A stretch of DNA of 64,000 bases, from positions 25,916,001-25,980,000 of the forward strand of contig OZ286460.1 of assembly GCA_965644265.1 (NCBI GenBank), given 5' to 3'. The notes beneath the pieces are model-generated. The model was not told the origin of the DNA, searched no databases, and was given only the letters and a program-made list of their open reading frames with translations. The translations under genes were made by a program, and so were the position numbers. Source of the stretch: Glycera tridactyla. Lineage: Eukaryota. Below are positions 17,115 through 50,500 of this stretch, one piece after another. How positions within the stretch are numbered: position 1 is the stretch's first letter; every line of letters begins with the position of its first letter.

Positions 17115-18080
17115 CGCAGAGAGCACGCCGACGTCCATTGGACGTCCTATGGACGTCGGCGGTACGTCCAGAGGACGTCCACTCCCGACGTCCATTGGAC
17201 GTCATTTTGTCTCGAGGAAAGACGTCCACTGGACGTCCGTTTTTGATCCAATTGATGTCCTATGGACGTCCAGAAGTGGACGTCCACAGGACGTCCAGTG
17301 GACGTCAGCCCAGTGCTTAGTTTTCTGATCCGACAGAAATTGGTCCTGTGGACGTCCAATGGACGTCTTGTGGACGTCCATGAGAGAGGTCCAATGGACG
17401 TCTGGTGGACGTCGATCAAAGGTCTGTAGGACGTCTCATGGACGTCCATGGCAACTGTTGCTGCCTCTGCTTGGGTCGAACATCGGCCTTAGTATAAAGG
17501 ATGTTCTGGATTCTAAGATAGGCTTTGAATAAATTTGGACAAATTTGGACAAATTTCCACAGAATTCAAGTGGTATATACATGCAAATGAGATCAAAAAT
17601 TGAGAAACATCATTCTCCATACTGACCTAATAGTTTGATTCGCATATACTTATTCACAGCTTGTAAAATATAATTTTTGGGACTACTTTTTGTGACGTCA
17701 GCTGGACGTCCATTGGACGTCTGATGGACGTCCATCAGACGTCCAATGGACGTCTATAGGGCGTATAACGGACGTCCATCAGACGTCCAATGGACGTACA
17801 TTGGACGTCTGTGTTGGACGTCCATTGGACGTCTGTTGGACGTCCAAACTCACGTCGATTCATGGACGTCCACTGGACGTCTGTTGGACGTCTAAATTAT
17901 GACCATCAAAACTGCGGGACCATTGCAATCCTCCCGAACGTCTGTTGGACGTCCAACGGACGTCCGAAATTCGACGTCATTCTTTTGACGTCCATACGAC
18001 GTCTAATGGACGTCCGATTTCGGACCTCCGACGATTCCGACGTCCTAGGACGTCCAGTGGACGTCGGCGTGCTATCTGGG
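17115..18080. mobile_element. 966-bp non-autonomous DNA transposon with long TIRs and GACGTC subterminal arrays (CMC/EnSpm-like)
   Basis: Left end AC|CGCAGAGAGCACGCCGACGTCCATTGGACGTCC matches the reverse complement of the right end GGACGTCCAGTGGACGTCGGCGTGCTATCTGGG|AC, giving a 2-bp AC TSD. About 40 GACGTC hexamers lie in two blocks around an AT-rich core (~17460-17690). Confidence 0.75.
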
Positions 18081-18759: not shown

Positions 18760-20310
18760 TCATGGCTCCGGGGTGGTGGAGTTGGAGCGAAGGTCAAACT
18801 CACTGGGACACACCTCTATAGTGATGGAGTTATCTGAATCATCGTCTGTAGTAGAGATGGTGCTTGCCCGTCTACTGTACAGATCAGGGTGATAGTGTAC
18901 CACCTCCGGGTTCACCCCTGGTTTCCTCAACAACAGATAGGCCGTGCCCATCGAGGGCCCCTCATCATCGCTATCCGTCATATCAAAACACCGGTTGCGC
19001 CGGTGTGAAGCGCCGGCACTACGCGACTGCTGATTACCACCATGTTGCTGAAGATTTTTCGCAGACCTGGAGGGTGATTGGTTGCCGAGGTGCTTCTTCA
19101 GTAGAGGAGGCAATAAAGCGCCCTTGGCAGCAGCAGCCAGCTTGGAGGTTTTGTGTTTTTTAGGCAGCTCTGCGCTGAGGCAATGTGCCGTCATGTTCCA
19201 GTCACCGAGTCCAAGATAAGGCGTGAAGCGCTCGGTGTTGTGGTTGTTAGAACCCCGAGTTCTGTTCTTGAGAATGTCCGTTTTGCTTGAGGATATGGGT
19301 GGCACTTTCTGAGTCACGGTAGCCTCTTCTCGGGGGAAACTTTCCCCTCCCAGAAGTTGGTCAAGGCGTTCAAACAGTTTCGTCACGCATGTCTCATGAA
19401 AATCTAATGTATAAACAATTGCACTTTCATTGGCTTCCCTGATGACTTCAGTCAGGGAAGAGCCTTTAGTCCTCGAAAGCCGTTCGTCTATGGAAGATAT
19501 AGTCAAGGATGTATAGGTGGAGTCAGCGGCGTGATACGAGTTCTGACAAGTTGTTTCTACTTGGCTGACGATACTTGGGAACTCATCTGGGAGCTGGAAG
19601 CCTGGGTCTTTCACCATGATGATGGCGATATTAGCTTCTGATGCCTGTAAGAGCAACTGTAAACAGTCTCGATCCATGATAGTCGACTTGTTCAGCATGA
19701 ATATAAACACATCACAGTCTCTCACTCCGTACGATGTATCCTTGGGCGCTGCAAAACGCATTGCATACAAGGAACTATTTGTGCGCACGTAACAATAAGG
19801 CAAGAGGGTGTTAACAAGGATGTCGACCTTGGTAAGCTGCGTCGACTCGCAGCGGTCGGGCCGCTGGCAACAGAAAAACACTCGTTTGCTGCGTTTCTGT
19901 GACATCATGAAATCGCGAGCGTCTTGGTTGTTTTTGTTGATGAGTCCCTCACAGCACCCGCCCATTTGTGCTGGCGGGGGGTGAGTCGGGGAGCGAGGGC
20001 GCGGAAACTTGGTGAGCGTCTCAGTGAGCGATTTGATTCGTTCAAGGTAAGGCTGCAGGAAGTACCAGAGGGAATTGAGCGCAGTGTCGTGGATAGATTC
20101 GGGGAAGGAATGTACGAGTCGGAAGAATGTAGCTAGGTCGTTCTCGTGGCTGTGAATCCATTCCAAGGCCCCGGCCAGACCAGCGGCAAGCTGCGCTGCT
20201 TGTTTACTGGACGCCTCGTGCCCTTTGATCACACCGGCGCACCCCTCGCGGAAGAATCCAAACAAGTGACTGTCGCGACTCAGTTGTTGCTGGTTGTTCG
20301 GCGACGTCAT
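18760..20310 (-). CDS. Single-exon 516-aa protein with a divergent TIR-like (SARM1/TIR_2-type) domain and a disordered C-terminal tail
   Basis: 1551-nt open frame with GC-rich, coding-like composition. ATG at 20310 (MTSPNNQQQ). An in-frame TGA lies upstream within the same putative exon, which starts after acceptor TTATCTGTTTGACAG at 20457. TIR-like segments: KRVFFCCQRPD; VRDCDVFIFMLNKSTIMDRDCLQLLLQASEANIAIIMVKDPGFQLPDEFP; AIVYTLDFHETCVTKLFERL. The CDS call is firmer than the domain call. Confidence 0.8.
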   Translation of the reverse strand: MTSPNNQQQLSRDSHLFGFFREGCAGVIKGHEASSKQAAQLAAGLAGALEWIHSHENDLATFFRLVHSFPESIHDTALNSLWYFLQPYLERIKSLTETLTKFPRPRSPTHPPPAQMGGCCEGLINKNNQDARDFMMSQKRSKRVFFCCQRPDRCESTQLTKVDILVNTLLPYCYVRTNSSLYAMRFAAPKDTSYGVRDCDVFIFMLNKSTIMDRDCLQLLLQASEANIAIIMVKDPGFQLPDEFPSIVSQVETTCQNSYHAADSTYTSLTISSIDERLSRTKGSSLTEVIREANESAIVYTLDFHETCVTKLFERLDQLLGGESFPREEATVTQKVPPISSSKTDILKNRTRGSNNHNTERFTPYLGLGDWNMTAHCLSAELPKKHKTSKLAAAAKGALLPPLLKKHLGNQSPSRSAKNLQQHGGNQQSRSAGASHRRNRCFDMTDSDDEGPSMGTAYLLLRKPGVNPEVVHYHPDLYSRRASTISTTDDDSDNSITIEVCPSEFDLRSNSTTPEP

Positions 20311-21554
20311 TGTGCTGAACGGAGCGGGCCGATTGTGCCGACGAGAACGACGACGACGACAAAGATCCCAAGTCTCACTGGACCAAGACACGAATGGTGA
20401 AGAAATGCCGCTGAACACAGAGATACTCCTGTGTAGTCAGGCCCCCTCCATTACATCTGTCAAACAGATAAGAAACACAACACAATTAGAGACATCCAAG
20501 ACACAGTAAATGCTCTCGGTGGCTAGCATCACTAAGAGACAAGGCTGAAATCGTGACCTGCAAAGGTAATGGAATTACGATGATCCGAAACACTCTCACA
20601 TGAATTATCATATAATGTACACAAATATACGTGCATTATCCAGCACTTAGTTATATGCACAGGATGACTCTATAATGAAACACACTAGGCGATGATTCTA
20701 GATATTGATCGACAGTCTCCCATTATCTTGTGTCTAGGGTGATGCTTAGTAGATACAGAGCATCATATTGTCATTGAAGTGTTACACACGGCATACGGAA
20801 TAAATAATCACATAGGTTGAACAAACAACCAAAAGGCCAACCAACCAACCGACAAACCAACCAAAATATCAATAATCCAAGTTAATAGACTGACCACCCA
20901 ACCCATCAACCGCTTAACGAAAAGGACAACCAACCAAGCAAACCAAGTCATTGAGTCCAGATATGTTATTGTATGCCTCATGATTCAGGTAGAACGTCGT
21001 GTCACAGTCTGCTTCGACATTAGCTTCCCTGAACTGGAGACAGTAGTAAGTGGTTGGCCATGTCTTTTCCGAGTGGATCTGAGTGATTTAGATCCATAGT
21101 AGAAGTAGGCCAAACTGGTTGCCGTCCACTCTCTGCTAGTCCAGTCTTAGTGATATTTAATCAATATTTGACACAAGTGGAGTTTTCTCCCGTTGACATA
21201 ATGTGCCATTGCTGTACCGACGCCATCGGGTCCAGGTCGTCCGTTCTAGTCATGTGCGTGTGTGTCTGAATCAACAGATACAGTTGTATTTTCGAGATTC
21301 AGCCTGGAGTTGGGACCTTGCATTTCCATTCCGAATAACTGGGATCGTCTACACAGCTCCCAGGCCATCTATACTGAACACACCGCTCATTGTGTCAAAA
21401 TGTACTCCTTACACACAAGACCTTGGTCCGAACAAGATGCAATGTGAAACTGTCACGATACAAAGAAGCATAATGGATTTGGTCTAGTATTATCGAAAAG
21501 ATAGTATTTGCAATCTGTGGTCCACATCGAGTGTCTGACTTCACGAATTTTCGC

Positions 21555-40524: not shown

Positions 40525-43426
40525 TCATATAAAATTCACGAAATTCTTTAGATTATCCTTAAACAATTTTGGCGGTAGATTTGTAAAATCATTATGCCTC
40601 ATTGTATACAGGTTCCATAACCTCGCTCCCCTATAGCGGAAAGAGCCCTCAGATAATTTCAACCTAGGCATATCGACATTCAGAAATGTTCGTGTCTGAG
40701 ATCTGGTATGGTATTCATGGGTTGTTGTTAAAAAAGATGCCAGTGGTGTATACTGTGGGTGAAGTACTTCACATAGTATTTTATTTATGTGGATTAAGGT
40801 GTGACATTCTCTACGACAGTCTAAGTATGGCATCTCCAGGTCTTGATGTAAGTCTATCGTTCTTGTATATCTATGGCACTGCGTTATTATCCTGAAAGCC
40901 TTGTTTTGAACTCTTTGTAGCTCGGTTGAGTCAGCCATACCCAGATTGTCGTAGACAATGTCATAGGCAGTATCAGCGTCTTGAAACGGGTGAGAGACAT
41001 ACTACGACTTAGTATACCTCTCAGCCTCCCCATAACGCCAACTCTACATAATGTTTTTGATCGAATATATTCAGCATGGGCTTTGAAGGTCAGATTGCTA
41101 TCCAGTATTATTCCCAGATACTTGAAAGTTATTACTTGTGAAACTGTTTGTTCATCAAATTTTATGGCAAATTGACATCTTTGTGTTTGCTGTTTCGATC
41201 CAAAAACCATTGTCTTTGTCTTGTTAACATTCAAACTTAACTTATTCCTTCTAAGCCACACACTTACTAACGATAGAGTCTCCTCTAATTTCCTATGTAA
41301 CATCATTGGTGAGACATCATGGACGATAATTGCTGTGTCATCAGCATACAGGCTCATACTGAGTCCCCTCATATAATGTGATATATCATTTACATATATT
41401 GTGAAGAGAAGGGGACCCAGTATGGATCCTTGCGGTACTCCGCAGGATACAGTTCGTTCACTCGATGTAATGCCATTTACCCTAACCTGGCAACTTCTGT
41501 TGGTAAGATAGCTTGAGAACCAGCTATTACATGTTTGATCAGAACCATATCTAAACAACTTTCTCAGGAGTAAGCCATGATCCACCGTGTCGAAAGCCTA
41601 CTTTAGGTCCAGGAAGACGACTCCACTGGTACTTCTATTTTCTAGATTTACGTATAGTTTATCCAAAAATTCAAGTAAACAAGTACCAGTGGAGCACCCC
41701 TCCCTGAACCCAGACTGCTCACGACACAGTAGACCATGGCCTTCGAAATAAAGAGAAATCTGTTTATGCACAACATGTTCAAGGACCTTGCTAAGTGTGC
41801 ATAAAAGACTAATTGGACGGTAATTCGCTTCTATAGTTCGATTGCCTTCTTTATAAAGAGGCACAATAGTAGCAGACTTCCATCTGGACGGGAAAATTCC
41901 TTCCGTGATACTGTTATTTATCAAATGACACAGAATAGGTGATAAAGACTTACTGCAATTTTCAACTATTCTGGCTGGGAGACCATCATCTTTACCTGCT
42001 TTATTCATGTGTAGTCGGTCTATTGCTTTTTTAACCTCGCTGGCATCTATGCATTTTAGACTCATAGTATCTTTCAAATTATACGGGAAATCATATAATG
42101 CGTCGACACCGTCATTTACGATTTTAGCGCTAAGATCATTACCAATATTACTGAAATAGTGGTTCATTTTATTAGAGATTTCATTCTTGTTAGTGGTATT
42201 TCCTATTTTTAGAACATCATTAGATCCTTTATTGTTACCCCCGAAACTGTTTATGGTCTCCCACATCTTCTTTGGGTTATTTCGATGATCGAAGACTGAG
42301 TCCTCTATGTACTGTCTCTGTAGATCACGTTTCAATTTCTTGCAACGTCTTTCTATGCCCTTCTTTAGATCTAGATTTTCTGGAGTGTTATTTATTTTAA
42401 ATTGTTTATTTAACAATTCTCTTTTTTTGATTAGGTCCAAATATTGTCCATTAAGCCACTTGGGCCAATTCTCTCTGACGCGATGTCTTTTCATAGGAAT
42501 GTGATCTTCTACGATGGTATTTAGCTTACTATACAACATTTGGGCACATTCGTCAGTATCACTAGAGGAATAAAAATCCGTCCAGTCTGCAGTCTGAATA
42601 TCTCTATTAATATCTTCAAAATTGGCATCAGCAAAGTCCTTGAAGTATACAAATTCTGATTTTCTAGACATGACAATCTTTTTCCTCGCAATGACAATCA
42701 TACTATGGTCCGAAAGACCCGTCTCAATGAGGCCATGTTGGTTGTATGATTCAGGACAATTCACAACTGCATGGTCAATCAAGCTTTTTGTGGTAGTGGT
42801 TACCCTAGTATATTTTGTAATTAATTGTGTCATATCACAATTTTTCAAAGAAGTTAAATATTGATTCTGTCTATTTGGTTTTGAAAAGTCCAAATTCGTG
42901 TCGCCCATTGCTACAATATCTCCAAATTTGTCATAACCAATATTTATACACCCGGACTCCAACCATTCACAAAATACTCCAGGGTCACCACTTGGGGGCC
43001 TATATAGACCACATAAGTAAATGGGCCTAGTATCGGGTAATATCAATTGCATCCATAGACCCTTGATGTCAGGGGTTAAGATTATTGAGTCGTTTATGAT
43101 TTCCACCGAGCGTTTTTTATGTATATAAATCAATAAACCTCCACCTCGTTCTTTCCCACTCTCTGCTGTGCGATCTACTCGAATATGAAAGTAGCCAGTT
43201 ATTGATATTTCACTGTCCTTTCTGTCAAAAAAGTTTCAGATGTAATTAAAATATCCAGATCACTTTGTAATAGCAGGATCTGTACATCATGAATTTTGTT
43301 GATTATACCCCTGACATTGAGGTAACCAATTTTAACTCCCTTAAATGATCCCACCTCTTTCATTGAGTTAAATTGTACACTTTGCTTCAGACATGAGTCA
43401 GTTTTCACTTCAATTGGATCTGGCAT
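40525..43426 (-). mobile_element. L2/CR1-group LINE, near-complete ORF2 (APE endonuclease + RT) with one stop and two frameshifts
   Basis: Endonuclease motifs: GYLNVRG, SETFL, RGGGLLIY, LYRPP, MGDTN, LIDH, LSDHSMI. RT motifs: NYRPISLL, QSGFR, FLDLK*AFDTVDH (TAG at ~41598), VPQGSILGPLLF, LYADDT, KYLG, LQRVQNKA. Frameshifts near 43222 and 40962. Confidence 0.92.
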
Positions 43427-44750: not shown

Positions 44751-47597
44751 TTGCGGGGTTATATGTATATAGTAATGTCGAGTTCCCAGAAGCATGGATC
44801 GTGCGGCCATTATATGGCAGGTTGGGACATGCATTCTCATTGCCCCTCTTGTCGCAATTGCGGCAATATTCCGGATATTGACGAGAATTCTCATCATACT
44901 TGTGAGATATGTAAAGAATGGACTGCAGAGCAATGGGTGCGTCATCATGGGCATCGTACATTAGCCTCTGAGAAGACAGTATCTCAGAAATCTCGTCACG
45001 ATAGATCTAGTAGTTCGAATTCCTCTAAGAAGTCTGCTCTTTCAGGGAAACACGAGGATCAAGGGGTTGAATTGTTAGGGGTAGAGGGACCGTTTCAGAA
45101 AGAGAATGCTTCTCCCTACGCTAAGAAGGATAGTTTGCAGAAGCCTAAGAAATATGTCCCTAAGAAGCTCATGAGTCCTAATATCCCTGAACCTTCCCCT
45201 TCTACGTCAGAACTACGGAGTACGGCGAAAAGAACGGTGAAAGTATATGAGTCGGATTTGGAGTCTGAGAAGAGTCCAGATGATTCTATCAATGAACCTC
45301 CGGTGAGATCTTCATCGAGAGTCCAAGAGCAGATTTTGGTAGAAGAGGAGGAGAAAATCATTGATTCAGGTTCCCGGACGGTTAGTCAACCTTTAGAGGA
45401 GTTCGACGCTGCGTTTGTTGTTGAAGAGGAGGATGTTTCCGGCCATACAAAAGAAATTGTCCGGACATTGTTAGGGTTTGATGATGCCTTTGAGGTGGAA
45501 GATGAGGAAGAGGTGTCACTCTCTCAGAGGTCCGGTAGTCCAATCAGAGCTTGTGTCCGGTCCTTGATAAAGGGTAGGCCAGGGTACTCAAGAATAGTCC
45601 AACAGATTCAGACCAGAGGTAGGTCCGGTAGACCTATTACTAATGGTGTCTCTATGTCCAGTGACAGTAGAAGAGGGACTTCTAGCACGACAACTCAGAT
45701 AGTCGGACGTCCTAGGGTTGGGACGAAGGTTGCCGATAGAGACCGGTCTGGTACTCGGGGGAGTAGTGACAGAATGGTGGTCCGGACCGGACAATATACA
45801 CCACCGGACATGGCAGTCCAGTCCACTGTTGAATCTTATTCCAACAGGACTAGAACTGATAATTCCTCATTATTGAAAAGAGGTAGAGCTTCCATATGGA
45901 AAGATCACCCTGCTTTCGAACAATCAAACAGACCCCATGAATTATTTGCTACACTCTCTAAACCGGTGTTGACTAGGGGTGAGCAGTTGATATCCGGACA
46001 GTTTTCTCCTAGGGGAACTAGAAAGAGAAAAGCAGGTATGGGTACACTAGAAGAAAGGATTTTTGGATCAGAGGAGTCTAGTTTTAAGGAGGATGGACTA
46101 AGGAAACTAGTGGCAGAGAGATCAGAACTTCAGAAACGCTTGGGAAATTTGAATGAGGTTCTAGATCAAGTAGAGAGAGGTGTCACGTCAGGAGATGAGG
46201 ACACCACAGAGTTTGCTGCAACTCAGATATCTAATAAGTCATCCACTCCACCAACTAAGAGAAGTCGTATTACTCCCTGCACATCAGGTGCTCCTGGGCA
46301 GGAGGTAATAATGGGAGAGAGACAGATAGCTGATTGGGACTTGAGTAATGTAGATACAAAATCACAGAATGCATTATTCTTAGCCATGAGGGATAGAATT
46401 GTCTCCTTAGAGAGTAGACTAGACGAGAAAGAAGCAGCAGACAAGGAAGAAGGGTCAGATTTGGGAGAAGAATCAGAGGATGAATCTGTCAGGCCAGCGG
46501 TCAGAAAGAGATTGAGGAGTTTTCGGAAATTTGCCTTAGATATCCTACCAAATCATATCCCTTCGCCAGATCCGATAGATACATGCACTACAAGTGTAGG
46601 AGTCATGAAGTTCGACAGATCTTTTATTGACAAACATAGAGCAAGAGAAGTGACTTTCGCGTCTGAGACAGCCCTTCCTTTGTCACCAATCATTGTGGGT
46701 ACTCAAGAGATTCTTGATAAATGTCTCCAATGTAAAGATAAAGAGGAACAATTCCAGGACATTAAGACACCACTGGAATCATTTGTAGTGGGTCAAGGAG
46801 GGCTGAATGAGGCCAACTCGAGATACTTCAAAGTATCAGTTCCGAAAGTTTTCGGCTGTAACCCCAAGGCTTATAAGATACGTAGTGGGGGTGAGAGGAA
46901 CAGAAGGTACTTAGTACAGTCTCCTATAATAGACTCTGATTATTATAATTATGGATCGGCATCTAAGAATGATCTTAAACCATCCAACGATGAGACTACT
47001 CTTAGAGAAGCACTCAAGGTTATTAGCTACGCAGATTTTGCGTTAGCTACAGGATTGAGCGCAGCGGATGTTTCAGAAGAAAGCATACCAGACGTTAGGG
47101 CTAAGGCCAAGGAGGCTACAAGAGTAGGTCTGAGAGCAGTAGACCATGTTGCACTTTTGGTATTAAAAGTGGTTAGCAACATGGAACTTGCTAGGCAAAC
47201 TACAGCGCTAAAGTCTGTATGTTTTGATGAGGATACAAAGGCCCAACTGAGAGCTCTGCCACTGGGTCAGAGACAGCTGTTTGCAGGAAAGCTCAAAGAG
47301 GCTTCTAAGGAAGCATTTGAGGTAGGAAGAAGAAGTAGAGAACTGTCTTCTGATTTCAAAGGTCAGAATGCTACATATTCAGCTACAGCATCATCATCAA
47401 ATCAGAGTGAAAAGCAGAAAGGGTGGAAACAGTCATCTGGTAGAGGCCGAGGACAAGGCAGAGGCAGGGGATCCAAGAGGGGATCCAGAGGGAGAGGAGG
47501 TTCGAACAATAACCCGAACTCATATAACCAAGATCAGAAGACTGAATTCAAGGTGACATTCCCTGAGTCGCAAGGAAGAGGGAAGAAACAGCCCTAG
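44751..47597 (+). CDS. gag: DIRS1 Gag-like ORF1 (948 codons; probable start MSSSQKH near 44774)
   Basis: Uninterrupted frame. N-terminal Cys/His cluster CGHYMAGWDMHSHCPSCRNC...HTCEIC, a long acidic/Ser-rich linker, a helical C-terminal domain and an RG-rich tail. It occupies the first-ORF position in the element. Confidence 0.8.
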   Translation: MRGYMYIVMSSSQKHGSCGHYMAGWDMHSHCPSCRNCGNIPDIDENSHHTCEICKEWTAEQWVRHHGHRTLASEKTVSQKSRHDRSSSSNSSKKSALSGKHEDQGVELLGVEGPFQKENASPYAKKDSLQKPKKYVPKKLMSPNIPEPSPSTSELRSTAKRTVKVYESDLESEKSPDDSINEPPVRSSSRVQEQILVEEEEKIIDSGSRTVSQPLEEFDAAFVVEEEDVSGHTKEIVRTLLGFDDAFEVEDEEEVSLSQRSGSPIRACVRSLIKGRPGYSRIVQQIQTRGRSGRPITNGVSMSSDSRRGTSSTTTQIVGRPRVGTKVADRDRSGTRGSSDRMVVRTGQYTPPDMAVQSTVESYSNRTRTDNSSLLKRGRASIWKDHPAFEQSNRPHELFATLSKPVLTRGEQLISGQFSPRGTRKRKAGMGTLEERIFGSEESSFKEDGLRKLVAERSELQKRLGNLNEVLDQVERGVTSGDEDTTEFAATQISNKSSTPPTKRSRITPCTSGAPGQEVIMGERQIADWDLSNVDTKSQNALFLAMRDRIVSLESRLDEKEAADKEEGSDLGEESEDESVRPAVRKRLRSFRKFALDILPNHIPSPDPIDTCTTSVGVMKFDRSFIDKHRAREVTFASETALPLSPIIVGTQEILDKCLQCKDKEEQFQDIKTPLESFVVGQGGLNEANSRYFKVSVPKVFGCNPKAYKIRSGGERNRRYLVQSPIIDSDYYNYGSASKNDLKPSNDETTLREALKVISYADFALATGLSAADVSEESIPDVRAKAKEATRVGLRAVDHVALLVLKVVSNMELARQTTALKSVCFDEDTKAQLRALPLGQRQLFAGKLKEASKEAFEVGRRSRELSSDFKGQNATYSATASSSNQSEKQKGWKQSSGRGRGQGRGRGSKRGSRGRGGSNNNPNSYNQDQKTEFKVTFPESQGRGKKQP

Positions 47598-47599
47598 GA

Positions 47600-50500
47600 A
47601 ATGGGGCGTCACCTCTCCAGAAAGTCAAACTGTAGGAGCACGATTACTAGGCTACGTGGAACAATGGCAGACTATAACTCATAACAGATACGTTCTATAG
47701 GTTGTAGGAGAGGGGTTCACACTGAACTTTCTGGAACCACCTCCACTTTTGCTAGATTTCATCCCTTTTTCTCTTCCAAAAGACCGAGAGAGGAGAGCAG
47801 CATTAATAGGGGAAATTGAGTCTATCAAGACAAAACAAGCAGTAGTTCAAGTCAAGGAATCGAACAGCCCAGGGTTTTACTGCAATCTGTTTTTAGTAGG
47901 GAAAGCAACAGGGGGTTTTCAACCCGTGATAAACCTGAAACCATTGAACAACTATGTCATAAATCAGAAGTTCAAGATGGCGACGGCACGATCTGTGGTG
48001 AGAGCAGTATCTCTCCACGATTGGACCGTCTCCATCGATTTGAAAGATGCCTACTTTCACGTGCCTGTACACCCACAGTATCAGAAGTACCTAAGATTTG
48101 CTTTGTCAAAGACAGAGGCCTACCAGTTTCAGGCTCTCCCTTTTGGTCTTTCGACAGCCTCTCAAATCTTTACTATGGTACTCAGAGAGGTGGTGCACCA
48201 TTTACATCGTCGAGGTATCAAGATACATTTTTACCTCGACGATTGGTTGATTCGTCATCAGAACCCAGAGATTTTGAGAATCAAGTTGGATTATGTCTTG
48301 GAACTAATGACCAGGCTCGGATGGGTAGTCAATTTGGAGAAATTAGATTTGATACCAACACAGACATTTGTATACCTAGGTATAGAATTCGACACCCATC
48401 GGGGTCAGGTCAAACCATCACTCAAAAGAGTTCAGAGACTCCTACTTTGTCTGAAACTATTTCTGCGCAGACCGAGACAACCTGCAAGAGTGGTATTGAA
48501 GCTTATTGGACACATGTCCAGTATGGCCGAATTCATCCATCTGGGTCGGCTTCACATCAAACCGATCCGGATGGCTCTCTTATCCCAATGGAGACCGTTT
48601 TTAGACCATTTGGAGATGATGGTGGAGATACCATTAGAGATTTTGTCAATAATAAGATGGTGGAACAACCAGGACAGATTTTATGTGGGAGTCCCATTGG
48701 TACAACCCATACCACAAGCAACACTATTGACAGATGCGTCGCTGGAGGGATGGGGAGCACATGTGATGGTAAACAAGTTCCGAGAGCAGGCGGCAGGAGA
48801 GTCGCCTTCTTCTTACAAGCGAAGATCTATAAACACCCTAGAATTAGAAGCGATATATTTAGCCATTCAAGCCTTTTCAGAGATTCTCAGAGATCAGACA
48901 GTGTTGATTCTAACGGACAATTCAACGGCAGTATCGTATTTGGTCAAACAGGGGGGAACCAGATCTTCCATGCTATGCGGGATAGCGTGGCAGATATTCA
49001 TGATGTCTCAGATGCTGAACCTGAGGATTACAGTTCGACATATACCAGGAAGACAGAATGTCCTGGCAGACGTGTTATCCAGGACAAAAACCAGTCCAGA
49101 CAGAGTGGTCGCTGGATCAGACAGTCTTTCATCTGGTTCTGGAAGCCTTCAAGATTTATCCTCTGATAGATCTGATGGCAACCCCGTTGAACAACAAGCT
49201 GCCGACATTTATTTGCCCTTATCCAGACTCAGGGGCCCTGGGGACAGACGCCTTGTCGATGTCATGGACACAGTTTTCGACAGGATATGTTTTTTCTCCG
49301 ACAGCTCAGAGAGGTGGTGCACCATTTACATCGTCCAGGTATCAAGATACATTTTTACCTCGACGATTGGTTGATTCGTCATCAGAACCCAGAGATTTTG
49401 AGAATCCAGTTGGATTATGTCTTGGAACTAACGACCAGGCTCGGATGGGTAGTCAATTTGGAGAAATTAGATTTGATACCAACACAGACATTTGTATACC
49501 TAGGTATAGAATTCGACACCCATCGGGGTCTGGTCGAACCATCACTCAAAAGAGTTCAGAGACTCCTACTTTGTCTGAAACTATTTCTGCGCAGACCGAG
49601 ACAACCTGCAAGAGTGGTATTGAAGCTTATTGGACACATGTCCAGTATGGCCGAATTCATCCATCTGGGTCGGCTTCACATCAAACCGATCCGGATGGCT
49701 CTCTTATCCCAATGGAGACCGTTTTTAGACCATTTGGAGATGATGGTGGAGATACCATTAGAGATTTTGTCAATAATAAGATGGTGGAACAACCAGGACA
49801 GATTTTATGTGGGAGTCCCATTGGTACAACCCATACCACAAGCAACACTATTGACAGATGCGTCGCTGGAGGGATGGGGAGCACATGTGATGGTAAACGA
49901 GTTCCGAGAGCAGGCGGCAGGAGAGTCGCCTTCTTCTTACAAGGGAAGATCTATAAACACTCTAGAATTAGAAGCGATATATTTAGCCATTCAAGCCTTT
50001 TCAGAGATTCTCAGAGATCAGTAACGGCAGTATCGTATTTGGTCAAACAGGGGGGGAACCAGATCTTCCATGCTATGCGGGATAGCGTGGCAGATATTCA
50101 TGATGTCTCAGATGCTGAACCTGAGGATTACAATTCGACATATACCAGGAAGACAGAATGTCCTGGCAGACGTGTTATCCAGGACAAAAACCAGTCCAGA
50201 CAGAGTGGTCGCTGGATCAGACAGTCTTTCATCTGGTTCTGGAAGCCTTCAAGATTTATCCTCTGATAGATCTGATGGCAACCCCGTTGAACAACAAGCT
50301 GCTGACATTTATTTGCCCTTATCCAGACCCAGGGGCCCTGGGGACAGACGCCTTGTCGATGTCATGGACACAGTTTTCGACAGGATATGTTTTTTCTCCG
50401 ACAGCTCTCATAAGAGAGGTGATCAACAAGATCAGGGGTCTGGAAATCACACTGGTTTGCATAGCACCTTGGTGGCCGAACCAGTCGTGGTTTCCAGACC

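What the first reader, a model, noticed from the sequence alone, without database searches (positions are those of the whole stretch)
18760..20310. Intronless gene for a putative catalytically dead SARM1-like TIR protein
Seen: a 516-aa ORF with an N-terminal helical region (LEWIHSHENDLATFFRLVHSFPES...), a central alpha/beta block and an acidic, Ser/Thr-rich tail (FDMTDSDDE, RRAS, TTDDDSD). By-eye alignment to TIR domains: RVFFCCQRPD for betaA (DVFISYRR); VRDCDVFIFML for the alphaB-betaC region; DRDCLQLLLQA for alphaC (consensus WCxxEL); IIMVKDPGFQLP for betaD; AIVYTLDFHETCVTKL for betaE-alphaE (SARM1 GIKWSHEYQEATIEKI). A ~45-aa Ser/Thr insert precedes betaE. Known: TIR NADase activity needs the alphaC glutamate. 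Inference: Leu replaces that Glu, so this would be a pseudo-enzyme TIR acting as adaptor, decoy or inhibitor, with no SAM, ARM, LRR or transmembrane partner domain. This is the best host-gene novelty candidate in the window.
Basis: partly seen in the sequence, partly recalled or inferred. Interest (0 to 1): 0.7.

Follow-up and report, generated by a model that had tools for sequence, protein, structure and literature searches.

The report
Hidden TIR-fold signalling protein gene
This invertebrate gene encodes a protein whose central part folds like the TIR modules used in immune signalling, lacks the glutamate that lets some TIRs destroy NAD+, and belongs to an unnamed, unstudied family shared by molluscs, a bryozoan and nematodes.

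Summary
Window 18760-20310 (minus strand) is an intact 516-codon ORF. It is far longer than chance allows (longest open frame in shuffles: 199 codons).

It has no Pfam, NCBIfam or PDB sequence match. An exhaustive HMMER search found 32 relatives of about 500-690 aa with the same layout, all unnamed or "uncharacterized". The named ones are gastropods, a cephalopod, a bryozoan and a nematode; a follow-up search added many nematodes.

An AlphaFold model built on these relatives gives a confident (pLDDT >90) five-strand alpha/beta domain at residues 139-324. In an exhaustive structure search its best matches are TIR domains: SARM1 Z 14.0, TIR-1 13.9, RPS4 13.1.

A profile alignment to the Cat1 TIR places the catalytic Glu (E74 of WCWDEL) on Leu219. 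That column varies across the family, while Leu220 and Ala223 next to it are almost invariant.

- **What does not:** "SARM1-like" is too specific (no ARM or SAM domains, and SARM1 ties with other TIRs). The missing Glu is a family trait, not a recent loss.
- **Selection:** relatives show purifying selection (dN/dS 0.21).
- **Untestable here:** expression of this copy.
- **Most likely role (inferred):** a non-enzymatic TIR scaffold.

The parts
18760..20310 (-). Complete coding sequence, 516 codons plus stop, in a single exon
   Evidence: The start position agrees with where relatives begin.
20011..20178 (-). N-terminal helical domain (residues 45-100). Family motif: GAxxWxxxH...LLxxYPxLIQDxxLDxxWxFLxP
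   Evidence: Helices 45-54, 56-68, 70-73 and 76-100, pLDDT about 65-82. Conserved columns A48, W51, P70, W82, P87. Absent from the nematode relatives.
19339..19896 (-). TIR-fold domain (residues 139-324)
   Evidence: pLDDT mostly above 90 with beta-alpha x5 topology. VIA-align: SARM1 TIR Z 14.0, rmsd 2.6 A, 131 of 140 residues; TIR-1 13.9; RPS4 13.1. Foldseek and Atlas TIR_2 clusters agree.
19636..19671 (-). Helix alphaC (residues 214-225, RDCLQLLLQASE). Leu219 (19654-19656) sits at the position of the TIR catalytic Glu; Leu220 and Ala223 are near-invariant in the family.
   Evidence: The HMM alignment puts family C-l-e-q-L on Cat1 C-W-D-E74-L. E74A is inactive (PMC12162218). Column statistics.
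19456..19542 (-). Variable Ser/Thr-rich insert between alphaD and the helix before betaE (residues about 257-285)
   Evidence: Low pLDDT at 263-270. This is the most length-variable region of the family alignment.
18961..19338 (-). Disordered basic/Ser-rich linker (residues 325-450), holding the conserved LPP motif (P401, 19102-19116)
   Evidence: pLDDT below 50. P401 is conserved in 34 of 34 sequences.
18883..18948 (-). Conserved C-terminal beta-hairpin (residues 455-476, GTAYLLLRKPGVNPEVVHYHPD). Family motif: TxYLVF...PxxVxWPP
   Evidence: Strands 456-460 and 469-473, pLDDT 76-85. T456 is in 51 of 53 relatives with a residue there and Y458 in 49 of 53. The window copy has His at 474, where 52 of 54 have Pro.
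18763..18846 (-). Acidic Ser/Thr tail (residues 489-516). Family motif: DSxxxFxxxxD...SxxP[DE]
   Evidence: Conserved columns D493, S494, F498, D504, D506, S509, P514.
20437..20480 (-). Putative 3' splice acceptor (pyrimidine tract plus AG at 20457-20480), followed by an in-frame stop (20437-20439) upstream of the ATG
   Evidence: Read directly from the sequence. Not confirmed by RNA data.

Best explanation
A real host gene with its whole coding sequence in one exon. It encodes a diverged member of an unnamed protostome protein family (molluscs, a bryozoan, nematodes). Layout: a small N-terminal helical domain, a TIR-fold domain, then a long disordered tail with conserved short motifs (LPP, a TxYLVF...WPP hairpin, an acidic DSxxxF..D end). 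The TIR domain has no acidic residue at the canonical catalytic Glu position, and that column is unconstrained across the family. The protein therefore most likely does not cleave NAD+. It would instead work as a scaffold: the TIR domain assembles with itself or with other TIR/STIR domains, and the N-terminal domain and tail motifs bring in partners. Shown: the ORF, the family, the fold, the missing Glu, and selection in relatives. Inferred: the scaffold or adaptor mechanism and any link to immunity.
For: The ORF is intact and far beyond chance. There are 32 relatives at E<=1e-3 in 1.84 billion representatives; the best is 4.5e-60 at 39% identity, and they share the same length class and block structure. 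In the tree the window protein is sister to P0001 (SH-aLRT 96) with a comparable branch length, 1.28 versus 1.19. It matches 27 of 33 family-conserved columns, within the family range of 0.73-0.97. The model built with the alignment gives pLDDT above 90 over 139-324. TIR domains top an exhaustive structural search at Z 12-14, against about 9.5 for generic CheY-like folds. Foldseek and the Atlas agree. Two relatives have sub-threshold TIR_2 hits. Three nematode relatives carry the source names 'TIR', 'TIR-like' or 'SEFIR domain-containing'. The catalytic Glu column maps to Leu219 and is variable, while Leu220 (55 of 55) and Ala223 (54 of 55) next to it are fixed. Purifying selection in relatives: dN/dS 0.21 (Sd 24, Nd 17, p about 1e-6) for two copies whose flanks barely align, and 1 difference in 1668 CDS bases against 25 in 2142 flank bases in another pair. 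The Patella orthologue also has an uninterrupted CDS.
Against: No sequence method reaches significance for TIR: Pfam 0 hits, and the best PDB profile hit is Cat1 at E 0.25. The fold call and the residue mapping therefore rest on a predicted model and a weak alignment. I could not inspect coordinates, so another acidic side chain could reach the pocket (D200 and D213 are conserved, and D213 aligns with Cat1 active-site S68). Nucleoside 2-deoxyribosyltransferase/MilB enzymes score nearly as high as TIRs. No RNA evidence exists for this copy, and no canonical AATAAA lies within 2 kb downstream. The window copy replaces two of the family's most invariant prolines (P229A, P474H), which could mean relaxed constraint. 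No partner or phenotype is known for any member.
Confidence: 0.6

Rival explanations
1. It is an enzyme after all: a TIR/NDT-superfamily hydrolase or transferase acting on NAD+ or another nucleotide, through a non-canonical set of residues in place of the alphaC Glu.
For: MilB, nucleoside 2-deoxyribosyltransferases and DNPH1 score Z 11-13 and Foldseek E about 1e-3, close to the TIR hits. One relative has a weak Nuc_deoxyrib_tr hit. Conserved polar residues cluster around betaC-alphaC: D/E200, N207, T210, D213, C216, plus R234, H305 and Y300. D213 aligns with the Cat1 active-site residue S68.
Against: The catalytic Glu used by both TIR NADases and NDT-type enzymes (general knowledge, not tested here) has no conserved counterpart. 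The long disordered tail with short motifs is typical of scaffolds. Most conserved positions are hydrophobic core or prolines.
Confidence: 0.15
2. It belongs to the SEFIR branch of the STIR superfamily and is an Act1/CIKS-like (C. elegans ACTL-1-like) adaptor of IL-17 receptor signalling.
For: One nematode relative is named 'SEFIR domain-containing protein' by UniRef. SEFIR structures appear among the matches: bacterial SEFIR Z 11.8, the IL-17RA/RB/ACT1 complex 10.4, IL-17RB 9.8. No BB-loop RDxxPG motif is visible, as in SEFIR domains. IL-17/ACTL-1 signalling exists in nematodes (PMC7190641).
Against: Pfam SEFIR gives no hit in any of 45 members scanned. TIR structures outrank SEFIR ones by 2-4 Z units. 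Non-amniote ACT1 orthologues are described as death domain plus SEFIR (PMC7190641). Nematode members here start directly with the TIR-like domain, and no Death domain is detected.
Confidence: 0.12
3. The window copy is a decaying or non-functional paralogue (possibly a retrocopy) that still has an open frame.
For: No RNA evidence. No canonical polyA signal. Non-conservative changes at near-invariant P229 and P474, and P43A. The neighbourhood is dense in transposable elements.
Against: 516 codons without a stop or frameshift. 82% of conserved columns are kept, within the family range. The branch length equals that of its sister P0001. A single-exon CDS is the normal state in relatives, so it is no sign of retroposition.
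Confidence: 0.05
4. It is a SARM1-derived paralogue that lost its ARM and SAM domains and its catalytic Glu.
For: The SARM1 TIR and C. elegans TIR-1 are nominally the best structural matches (Z 14.0 and 13.9; Foldseek rank 1).
Against: Those matches tie with RPS4, MilB and IL-18Rbeta within about 1 Z unit, at 14-16% identity. There is no sequence-level hit to SARM1 and no ARM or SAM domain. The family has its own conserved N- and C-terminal modules and is itself old (molluscs to nematodes).
Confidence: 0.03

Closest known systems
SARM1 / C. elegans TIR-1 TIR domain
   Same: Best structural match to residues 141-320 (Z 14.0, rmsd 2.6 A, 131 of 140 residues aligned). Same beta-alpha x5 order. 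The alphaC pattern hydrophobic-x-x-[E/L]-hydrophobic-x-x-Ala followed by an I-P-I betaD resembles the SARM1 motif as I recall it (not tool-checked).
   Different: No ARM or SAM domains. 14-16% identity. Leu instead of the catalytic Glu. An extra insert of about 30 aa before betaE. Family-specific N-terminal helical domain and C-terminal hairpin.
Non-catalytic animal TIR adaptors and receptors (MyD88, TIRAP/MAL, IL-1R/IL-18R family, Hydra TRR-2)
   Same: TIR fold at Z 10.6-12.7. A cytosolic protein with one TIR domain plus other interaction regions. A role in assembly rather than catalysis is expected.
   Different: No Pfam TIR/TIR_2 hit. No box 2 RDxxPG BB-loop motif. No death domain or transmembrane segment. 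Restricted, so far, to protostomes.
Cat1 and other prokaryotic or plant NADase TIRs (WCxxEL motif)
   Same: Cat1 is the top PDB sequence-profile hit for the betaA-betaD half (E 0.25) and a structural match at Z 12.1. The family motif FIFxxNxxTLxDxxCLxxLxxA parallels Cat1 FLAFLSNEYLKSDWCWDELEQA.
   Different: The Glu (Cat1 E74) is replaced. The counterparts of Cat1 D33 and of the Trp residues are not conserved. No CARF or other sensor domain.
SEFIR domains (IL-17 receptors, Act1/ACTL-1)
   Same: Same STIR superfamily fold (Z 9.3-11.8). No BB-loop motif. One nematode relative carries the source name 'SEFIR domain-containing protein'.
   Different: No Pfam SEFIR hit. Lower structural scores than TIR. 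No death domain, unlike the architecture described for non-amniote ACT1 (PMC7190641).
Nucleoside 2-deoxyribosyltransferase / MilB / DNPH1 hydrolases
   Same: Similar fold scores (Z 11-13; Foldseek E 1e-3 to 5e-3).
   Different: Those are compact stand-alone enzymes of about 150 aa with a catalytic Glu. Here that column is unconstrained, and the domain sits inside a 516-aa protein with disordered regions.

Membership tests
TIR domain superfamily (fold level) | Flavodoxin-like fold: five parallel strands alternating with five helices, superposable on solved TIR domains | tested here: met
   Model pLDDT above 90 over 139-324. The top of 48,161 chains are TIR domains at Z 12-14, and generic CheY-like folds score about 9.5. 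Foldseek probability 1.0 for TIR-1 and SARM1. Based on a predicted structure, not a solved one.
TIR domain (Pfam PF01582 / PF13676) | Score above the curated gathering threshold of the TIR or TIR_2 HMM | tested here: not met
   0 hits for the window protein at E<=10. The best in the family are P0009 and P0010, at 13.6 and 12.6 bits against a cut-off of 28. None in 10 nematode members.
NADase-type TIR (SARM1, plant TNL, bacterial TIR) | Catalytic Glu in alphaC (WCxxEL; SARM1 E642, Cat1 E74) | tested here: not met
   The profile alignment places Cat1 E74 on Leu219. E74A is inactive. The family column reads N11, L10, T8, Q7, A4... E1. The alignment itself is weak (E 0.25), and no 3D superposition could be inspected.
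Signalling TIR (TLR/IL-1R/MyD88 type) | Box 2 BB-loop motif RDxxPG between betaB and alphaB | tested here: not met
   The segment 177-192 reads TNSSLYAMRFAAPKDT, with no such motif. The region is variable in the family and has lower pLDDT.
SARM1 orthologue | ARM repeats plus two SAM domains N-terminal to the TIR | tested here: not met
   No Pfam domain at all. The N-terminal region is a family-specific helical module of about 55 aa.
SEFIR domain / Act1-like adaptor | Pfam SEFIR (PF08357) match; death domain plus SEFIR architecture in non-amniotes | tested here: not met
   No SEFIR or Death hit in 45 members. Architecture as described in PMC7190641. SEFIR structures score below TIR.
The unnamed protostome family itself (relatives P0001-P0032, P0075-P0097) | Significant full-length sequence similarity plus the shared motifs (CLxxLxxAxxxxIP, TxYLVF...WPP, LPP) | tested here: met
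   E 4.5e-60 to P0001, and 10 relatives below 1e-10. Motifs present, with A229 and H474 as deviations. Sister to P0001 in the tree.
Expressed, functional gene | Transcript evidence and purifying selection on this copy | not testable with these tools
   No sequencing run was listed for this DNA. The nearest relative is 39% identical, so dS is saturated. Selection is shown only for relatives.

The most novel reading that the evidence does not exclude
The family is a so far undescribed TIR-type signalling adaptor of protostomes. That would give nematodes a further TIR-type protein, beyond the two usually counted (my recollection, not checked here). It would couple TIR/STIR receptors to downstream factors through its invariant C-terminal hairpin and acidic tail, taking the place of adaptors such as TRIF/TRAM/TIRAP, which by my recollection (not checked here) have not been found in these phyla.
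Probability: 0.25. Interest if true: 0.7.

Novelty: new variant of a known kind. Interest (0 to 1): 0.45.

Why it matters
Surveys of TIR proteins in invertebrates generally rely on Pfam or SMART models, and this family escapes those models. It is conserved from molluscs to nematodes (including Caenorhabditis and Pristionchus species), is under purifying selection, and has no name, paper or phenotype that I could find.

If it is a TIR adaptor, it adds a component to protostome innate or neuronal signalling that can be tested genetically in nematodes. If it proves catalytic without the canonical Glu, it would widen the known chemistry of TIR domains. For the scan, it also shows that a by-eye strand assignment on raw sequence can be correct.

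Tried and rejected
**Searches that gave nothing**
- Word-index homology searches with the protein and with alignment A1 were blank. The alignment search did not even recover its own members, so that blank means nothing.
- Pfam and NCBIfam gave no hits.
- PDB sequence and profile searches gave nothing significant. Only the betaA-betaD half-profile put a TIR (Cat1) first, at E 0.25.
- The single-sequence AlphaFold model was useless (pLDDT 35).
- No sequencing runs were listed.
- Paper searches for assembly and protein accessions found nothing. Searches for structure-based TIR surveys in molluscs found nothing on this family.
- Atlas look-ups of the two domains separately failed three times because the service was busy.

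**Inconclusive checks**
- The Logan contigs of relatives have no polyA tails. Shared contig ends hint at transcripts but prove nothing.
- No canonical AATAAA lies downstream.

**Ideas rejected**
- A chance ORF.
- A transposable-element gene: there are no TE domains, only one to a few near-identical sequences per 90% cluster for most relatives (14 at most), and its own conserved family.
- An N-terminal extension through the upstream acceptor: an in-frame stop blocks it.
- An Act1/ACTL-1 identity.

**Not done**
Full report
**1. The observation**

- The minus strand of window 18760-20310 carries an ATG-initiated ORF of 516 codons plus stop. The open frame extends to 552 codons from an upstream GTG.
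- With the local base composition, the chance of 552 stop-free codons is about 8e-11 per start position. Twenty shuffles of the whole window gave open frames of at most 199 codons.
- The only other long ORFs in the window belong to retroelements: RVT_1 and RT_RNaseH hits at 40887-43133 and 47749-49374.
- The CDS has higher GC (0.52) than the window (0.43), with GC3 0.59.
- Upstream, a pyrimidine tract ending in AG (20457-20480) looks like a 3' splice acceptor. An in-frame TGA at 20437-20439 separates it from the ATG.
- The coding sequence therefore sits in one exon, but a 5'-UTR intron is likely. "Single coding exon" is safer than "intronless".

**2. Is it a gene with relatives?**

- Pfam, NCBIfam, PDB sequences and the word-index search gave nothing.
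- The exhaustive HMMER search of 1.84 billion representatives found 32 proteins at E<=1e-3, and 10 at E<=1e-10. The best is P0001 at 4.5e-60 and 39% identity.
- Most are 500-690 aa and align over the same blocks:
  - an N-terminal helical motif (GAxxW...YPxLIQDxxLDxxWxFLxP);
  - a central block (VYxC ... FVR ... DxFIFxxNxxTLxDxxCLxxLxxAxxxxIPxIxVR ... LPxxLP ... GYxxSxxYxxxxHxxC);
  - a variable linker with an invariant LPP;
  - a hairpin motif (TxYLVF...PxxVxWPP);
  - an acidic DSxxxFxxxxD tail.
- Cluster look-ups name Patella vulgata and P. caerulea, Haliotis, Littorina, Lottia, Aplysia, Bulinus, the cephalopod Argonauta, the bryozoan Watersipora and the nematode Auanema. All are "uncharacterized", "hypothetical" or "unnamed".
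- A word search seeded with the Auanema protein added strongylid, Pristionchus, Caenorhabditis (angaria, briggsae), Plectus, Steinernema and Heterorhabditis proteins.
- Three of these carry the source names "TIR domain-containing", "TIR-like domain-containing" or "SEFIR domain-containing". None has a Pfam hit.
- The nematode proteins lack the N-terminal helical module but keep the central domain and the hairpin.
- In a quick maximum-likelihood tree the window protein is sister to P0001 (SH-aLRT 96) with an equal branch length (1.28 against 1.19). It sits in a group of unnamed ENA/Logan sequences plus the bryozoan. Gastropods, cephalopods and nematodes form their own groups.
- The family evolves fast (median terminal branch about 1 change per site).

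**3. Selection and gene structure in relatives**

- Two copies in one ENA assembly (L005, L006) differ at 24 synonymous and 17 non-synonymous sites. That gives dN/dS 0.21 (Fisher p about 1e-6), while their flanks barely align.
- Two NCBI assemblies carrying P0033 differ at 1 of 1668 CDS positions (synonymous) against 25 of 2142 flanking positions, p about 9e-6.
- The CDS is uninterrupted in those loci and in the Patella locus, where the called gene range translates exactly to the RefSeq protein XP_050405039.1. The bryozoan gene spans 17 kb, so it has introns.
- The window protein keeps 27 of 33 columns that are at least 75% conserved. This is within the family range, but it has Ala for Pro229 (Pro in 53 of 55) and His for Pro474 (Pro in 52 of 54).
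- Expression of this copy could not be tested, because no public run was listed.

**4. The fold**

- Folded alone, the protein gave a useless model (pLDDT 35).
- With the 35-sequence alignment A2, mean pLDDT rose to 64.5 and residues 139-324 came out mostly above 90. The order is:
  - betaA 143-147, alphaA 156-169, betaB 174-177, alphaB 189-197;
  - betaC 201-206, alphaC 214-225, betaD 229-234, alphaD 246-256;
  - a poorly defined insert (about 257-285);
  - helix 286-295, betaE 298-299, alphaE 302-320.
- VIA-align against 48,161 PDB representatives gave these top matches:

| Match | Z | Note |
|---|---|---|
| SARM1 TIR | 14.0 | rmsd 2.6 A, 131 of 140 residues |
| C. elegans TIR-1 | 13.9 | |
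| RPS4 TIR | 13.1 | |
| MilB | 12.9 | |
| IL-18Rbeta TIR | 12.7 | |
| Hydra TRR-2 | 12.4 | |
| Cat1 | 12.1 | |
| MyD88 | 11.8 | |
| SEFIR domains | 9.3-11.8 | |
| CheY-like receivers | about 9.5 | generic fold |

- Foldseek ranks TIR-1, ThsB, deoxyribosyltransferases, SPARTA and SARM1 first, at E about 1e-3 and probability about 1.0.
- The ESM Atlas shape search returns TIR_2 clusters.
- Two relatives give sub-threshold TIR_2 hits over the betaB-betaD region, and one a weak Nuc_deoxyrib_tr hit.
- The domain therefore belongs structurally to the TIR/NDT superfamily, with TIR proper the best fit. No sequence model reaches its threshold.
- SARM1 is only nominally first. Differences under 1 Z unit are ties.

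**5. The catalytic residue**

- A profile of the betaA-betaD half (A4) searched against all PDB sequences puts the CRISPR-associated TIR Cat1 first. The score is E 0.25: not significant, but it is the same chain as a Z 12.1 structural match.
- It aligns family ...sdvfifllnestlsdedCleqLvaA... with Cat1 ...SQYFLAFLSNEYLKSDWCWDELEQA....
- Counting from the printed coordinates, the Cat1 Glu is E74. The residues at 33 and 68 are D and S.
- The Cat1 paper lists D33, S68 and E74 among the residues lining the NADase site, and reports that the D33A, S68A and E74A substitutions (among others) no longer caused growth arrest in vivo (PMC12162218).
- E74 falls on family column 219, which is Leu in the window protein.
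- Across 55 family members that column reads N11, L10, T8, Q7, A4, M3, S3, D3, I2, and C, R, E, K once each. The next residue, Leu220, is invariant, and Ala223 is in 54 of 55.
- Residues 216-224 (CLQLLLQAS) contain no acidic side chain, so a register error of up to three positions does not change the result.
- The absence of the Glu is thus a family property. I could not inspect coordinates, so a substitute carboxylate from elsewhere is not excluded. D/E200 and D213 are conserved, and D213 aligns with Cat1 S68.

**6. What it most likely does**

- Shown: a selected, fast-evolving protostome protein with a TIR-fold core, a lineage-variable N-terminal helical module, and a disordered tail that carries strongly conserved short motifs.
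- The hairpin (T456, Y458, P468, V471, W/F473, P474) is predicted with pLDDT 76-85.
- Several Atlas alignments to TIR proteins extend from residue 140 to 492-516. This hints that the hairpin packs against the TIR domain, but it is only an inference.
- Inferred: a non-enzymatic scaffold or adaptor that oligomerises through its TIR domain and recruits partners through the N-terminal module and tail motifs.
- The closest relatives share an RRxS site near residue 480 (RRAS here, RRDS and RRES in P0001 and P0009). That suggests phosphoregulation.
- Rivals: a non-canonical enzyme, a SEFIR/Act1-like adaptor, a decaying copy, and a SARM1-derived paralogue. They are weighed in the rival-explanation entries of this report.
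- The Act1 idea was checked against the ACTL-1 literature. Non-amniote ACT1 is described as death domain plus SEFIR (PMC7190641), which does not fit proteins that start with the TIR-like domain and show no Death or SEFIR signal.

**7. Novelty**

- I found no paper naming any member. There is no Pfam family, and every source name is generic.
- Source names on a few nematode entries already flag them as TIR-like or SEFIR, so the fold is not wholly unnoticed.
- The architecture and the family are undescribed: a new variant of a known kind, of moderate interest.
I did not examine it.

Noticed in passing
window 17117-18078: About 1 kb downstream of the gene lies an element bounded by 33-nt inverted repeats (17117-17149 and 18046-18078, 94% complementary). 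It is filled with at least 32 copies of an 11-bp periodic GGACGTCCAxT-type unit that also form many internal palindromes. It looks like a MITE or a foldback-type repeat.
   Followed up: partly
window 44751-51696: A large retroelement: a 948-aa Ser/Arg-rich ORF, then RT plus RNase H (47749-49374; RVT_1 3e-21), then an internal near-duplicate of part of the RT/RNase H region (about 49058-50266 repeats 48021-49166), and a 512-aa ORF (50158-51696) that looks by eye like a tyrosine recombinase but has no Pfam hit. The layout is DIRS-like.
   Followed up: partly
window 40887-43133 (minus strand): A LINE-type element whose reverse transcriptase is split over two adjacent ORFs (RVT_1 positions 7-76 and 84-204). 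There is a break between 41585 and 41598.
   Followed up: partly
window 20437-20480 (minus strand): A candidate 3' splice acceptor, followed by two tiny upstream ORFs (ATG-TAA at 20456; ATGGAGGGGGCCTGA just after it) ahead of the main ATG. This may be a 5'-UTR intron with uORF regulation.
   Followed up: no
L005:2001-3923 and L006:2001-3923 (ENA ERZ26052287): One assembly holds two 640-aa copies of the family. They are 97% identical in protein, but their 2-kb flanks barely align (23-42% mismatches plus gaps). They are either recent paralogues or very divergent haplotypes. One copy has an RVT_1 gene just downstream.
   Followed up: partly
L013:1501-18653 (Watersipora subatra) versus L012:1501-3075 (Patella vulgata): The bryozoan orthologue spans 17 kb for 546 aa, so it has introns. 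The limpet orthologue, and every ORF-called relative, has an uninterrupted CDS. Intron loss or retroposition may have occurred early in some lineages. Note that ORF-based gene calling biases detection towards intronless members.
   Followed up: no
P0075-P0097 (nematode relatives): Nematodes, including Caenorhabditis angaria and C. briggsae and Pristionchus species, have a shorter version (about 365-480 aa) that lacks the N-terminal helical module. Its betaC-alphaC motif is very conserved (AEAMLFFVNEFTLGDKNCLLNLQYAWHLMVPxIMLRPP). Source names disagree between TIR, TIR-like and SEFIR.
   Followed up: partly
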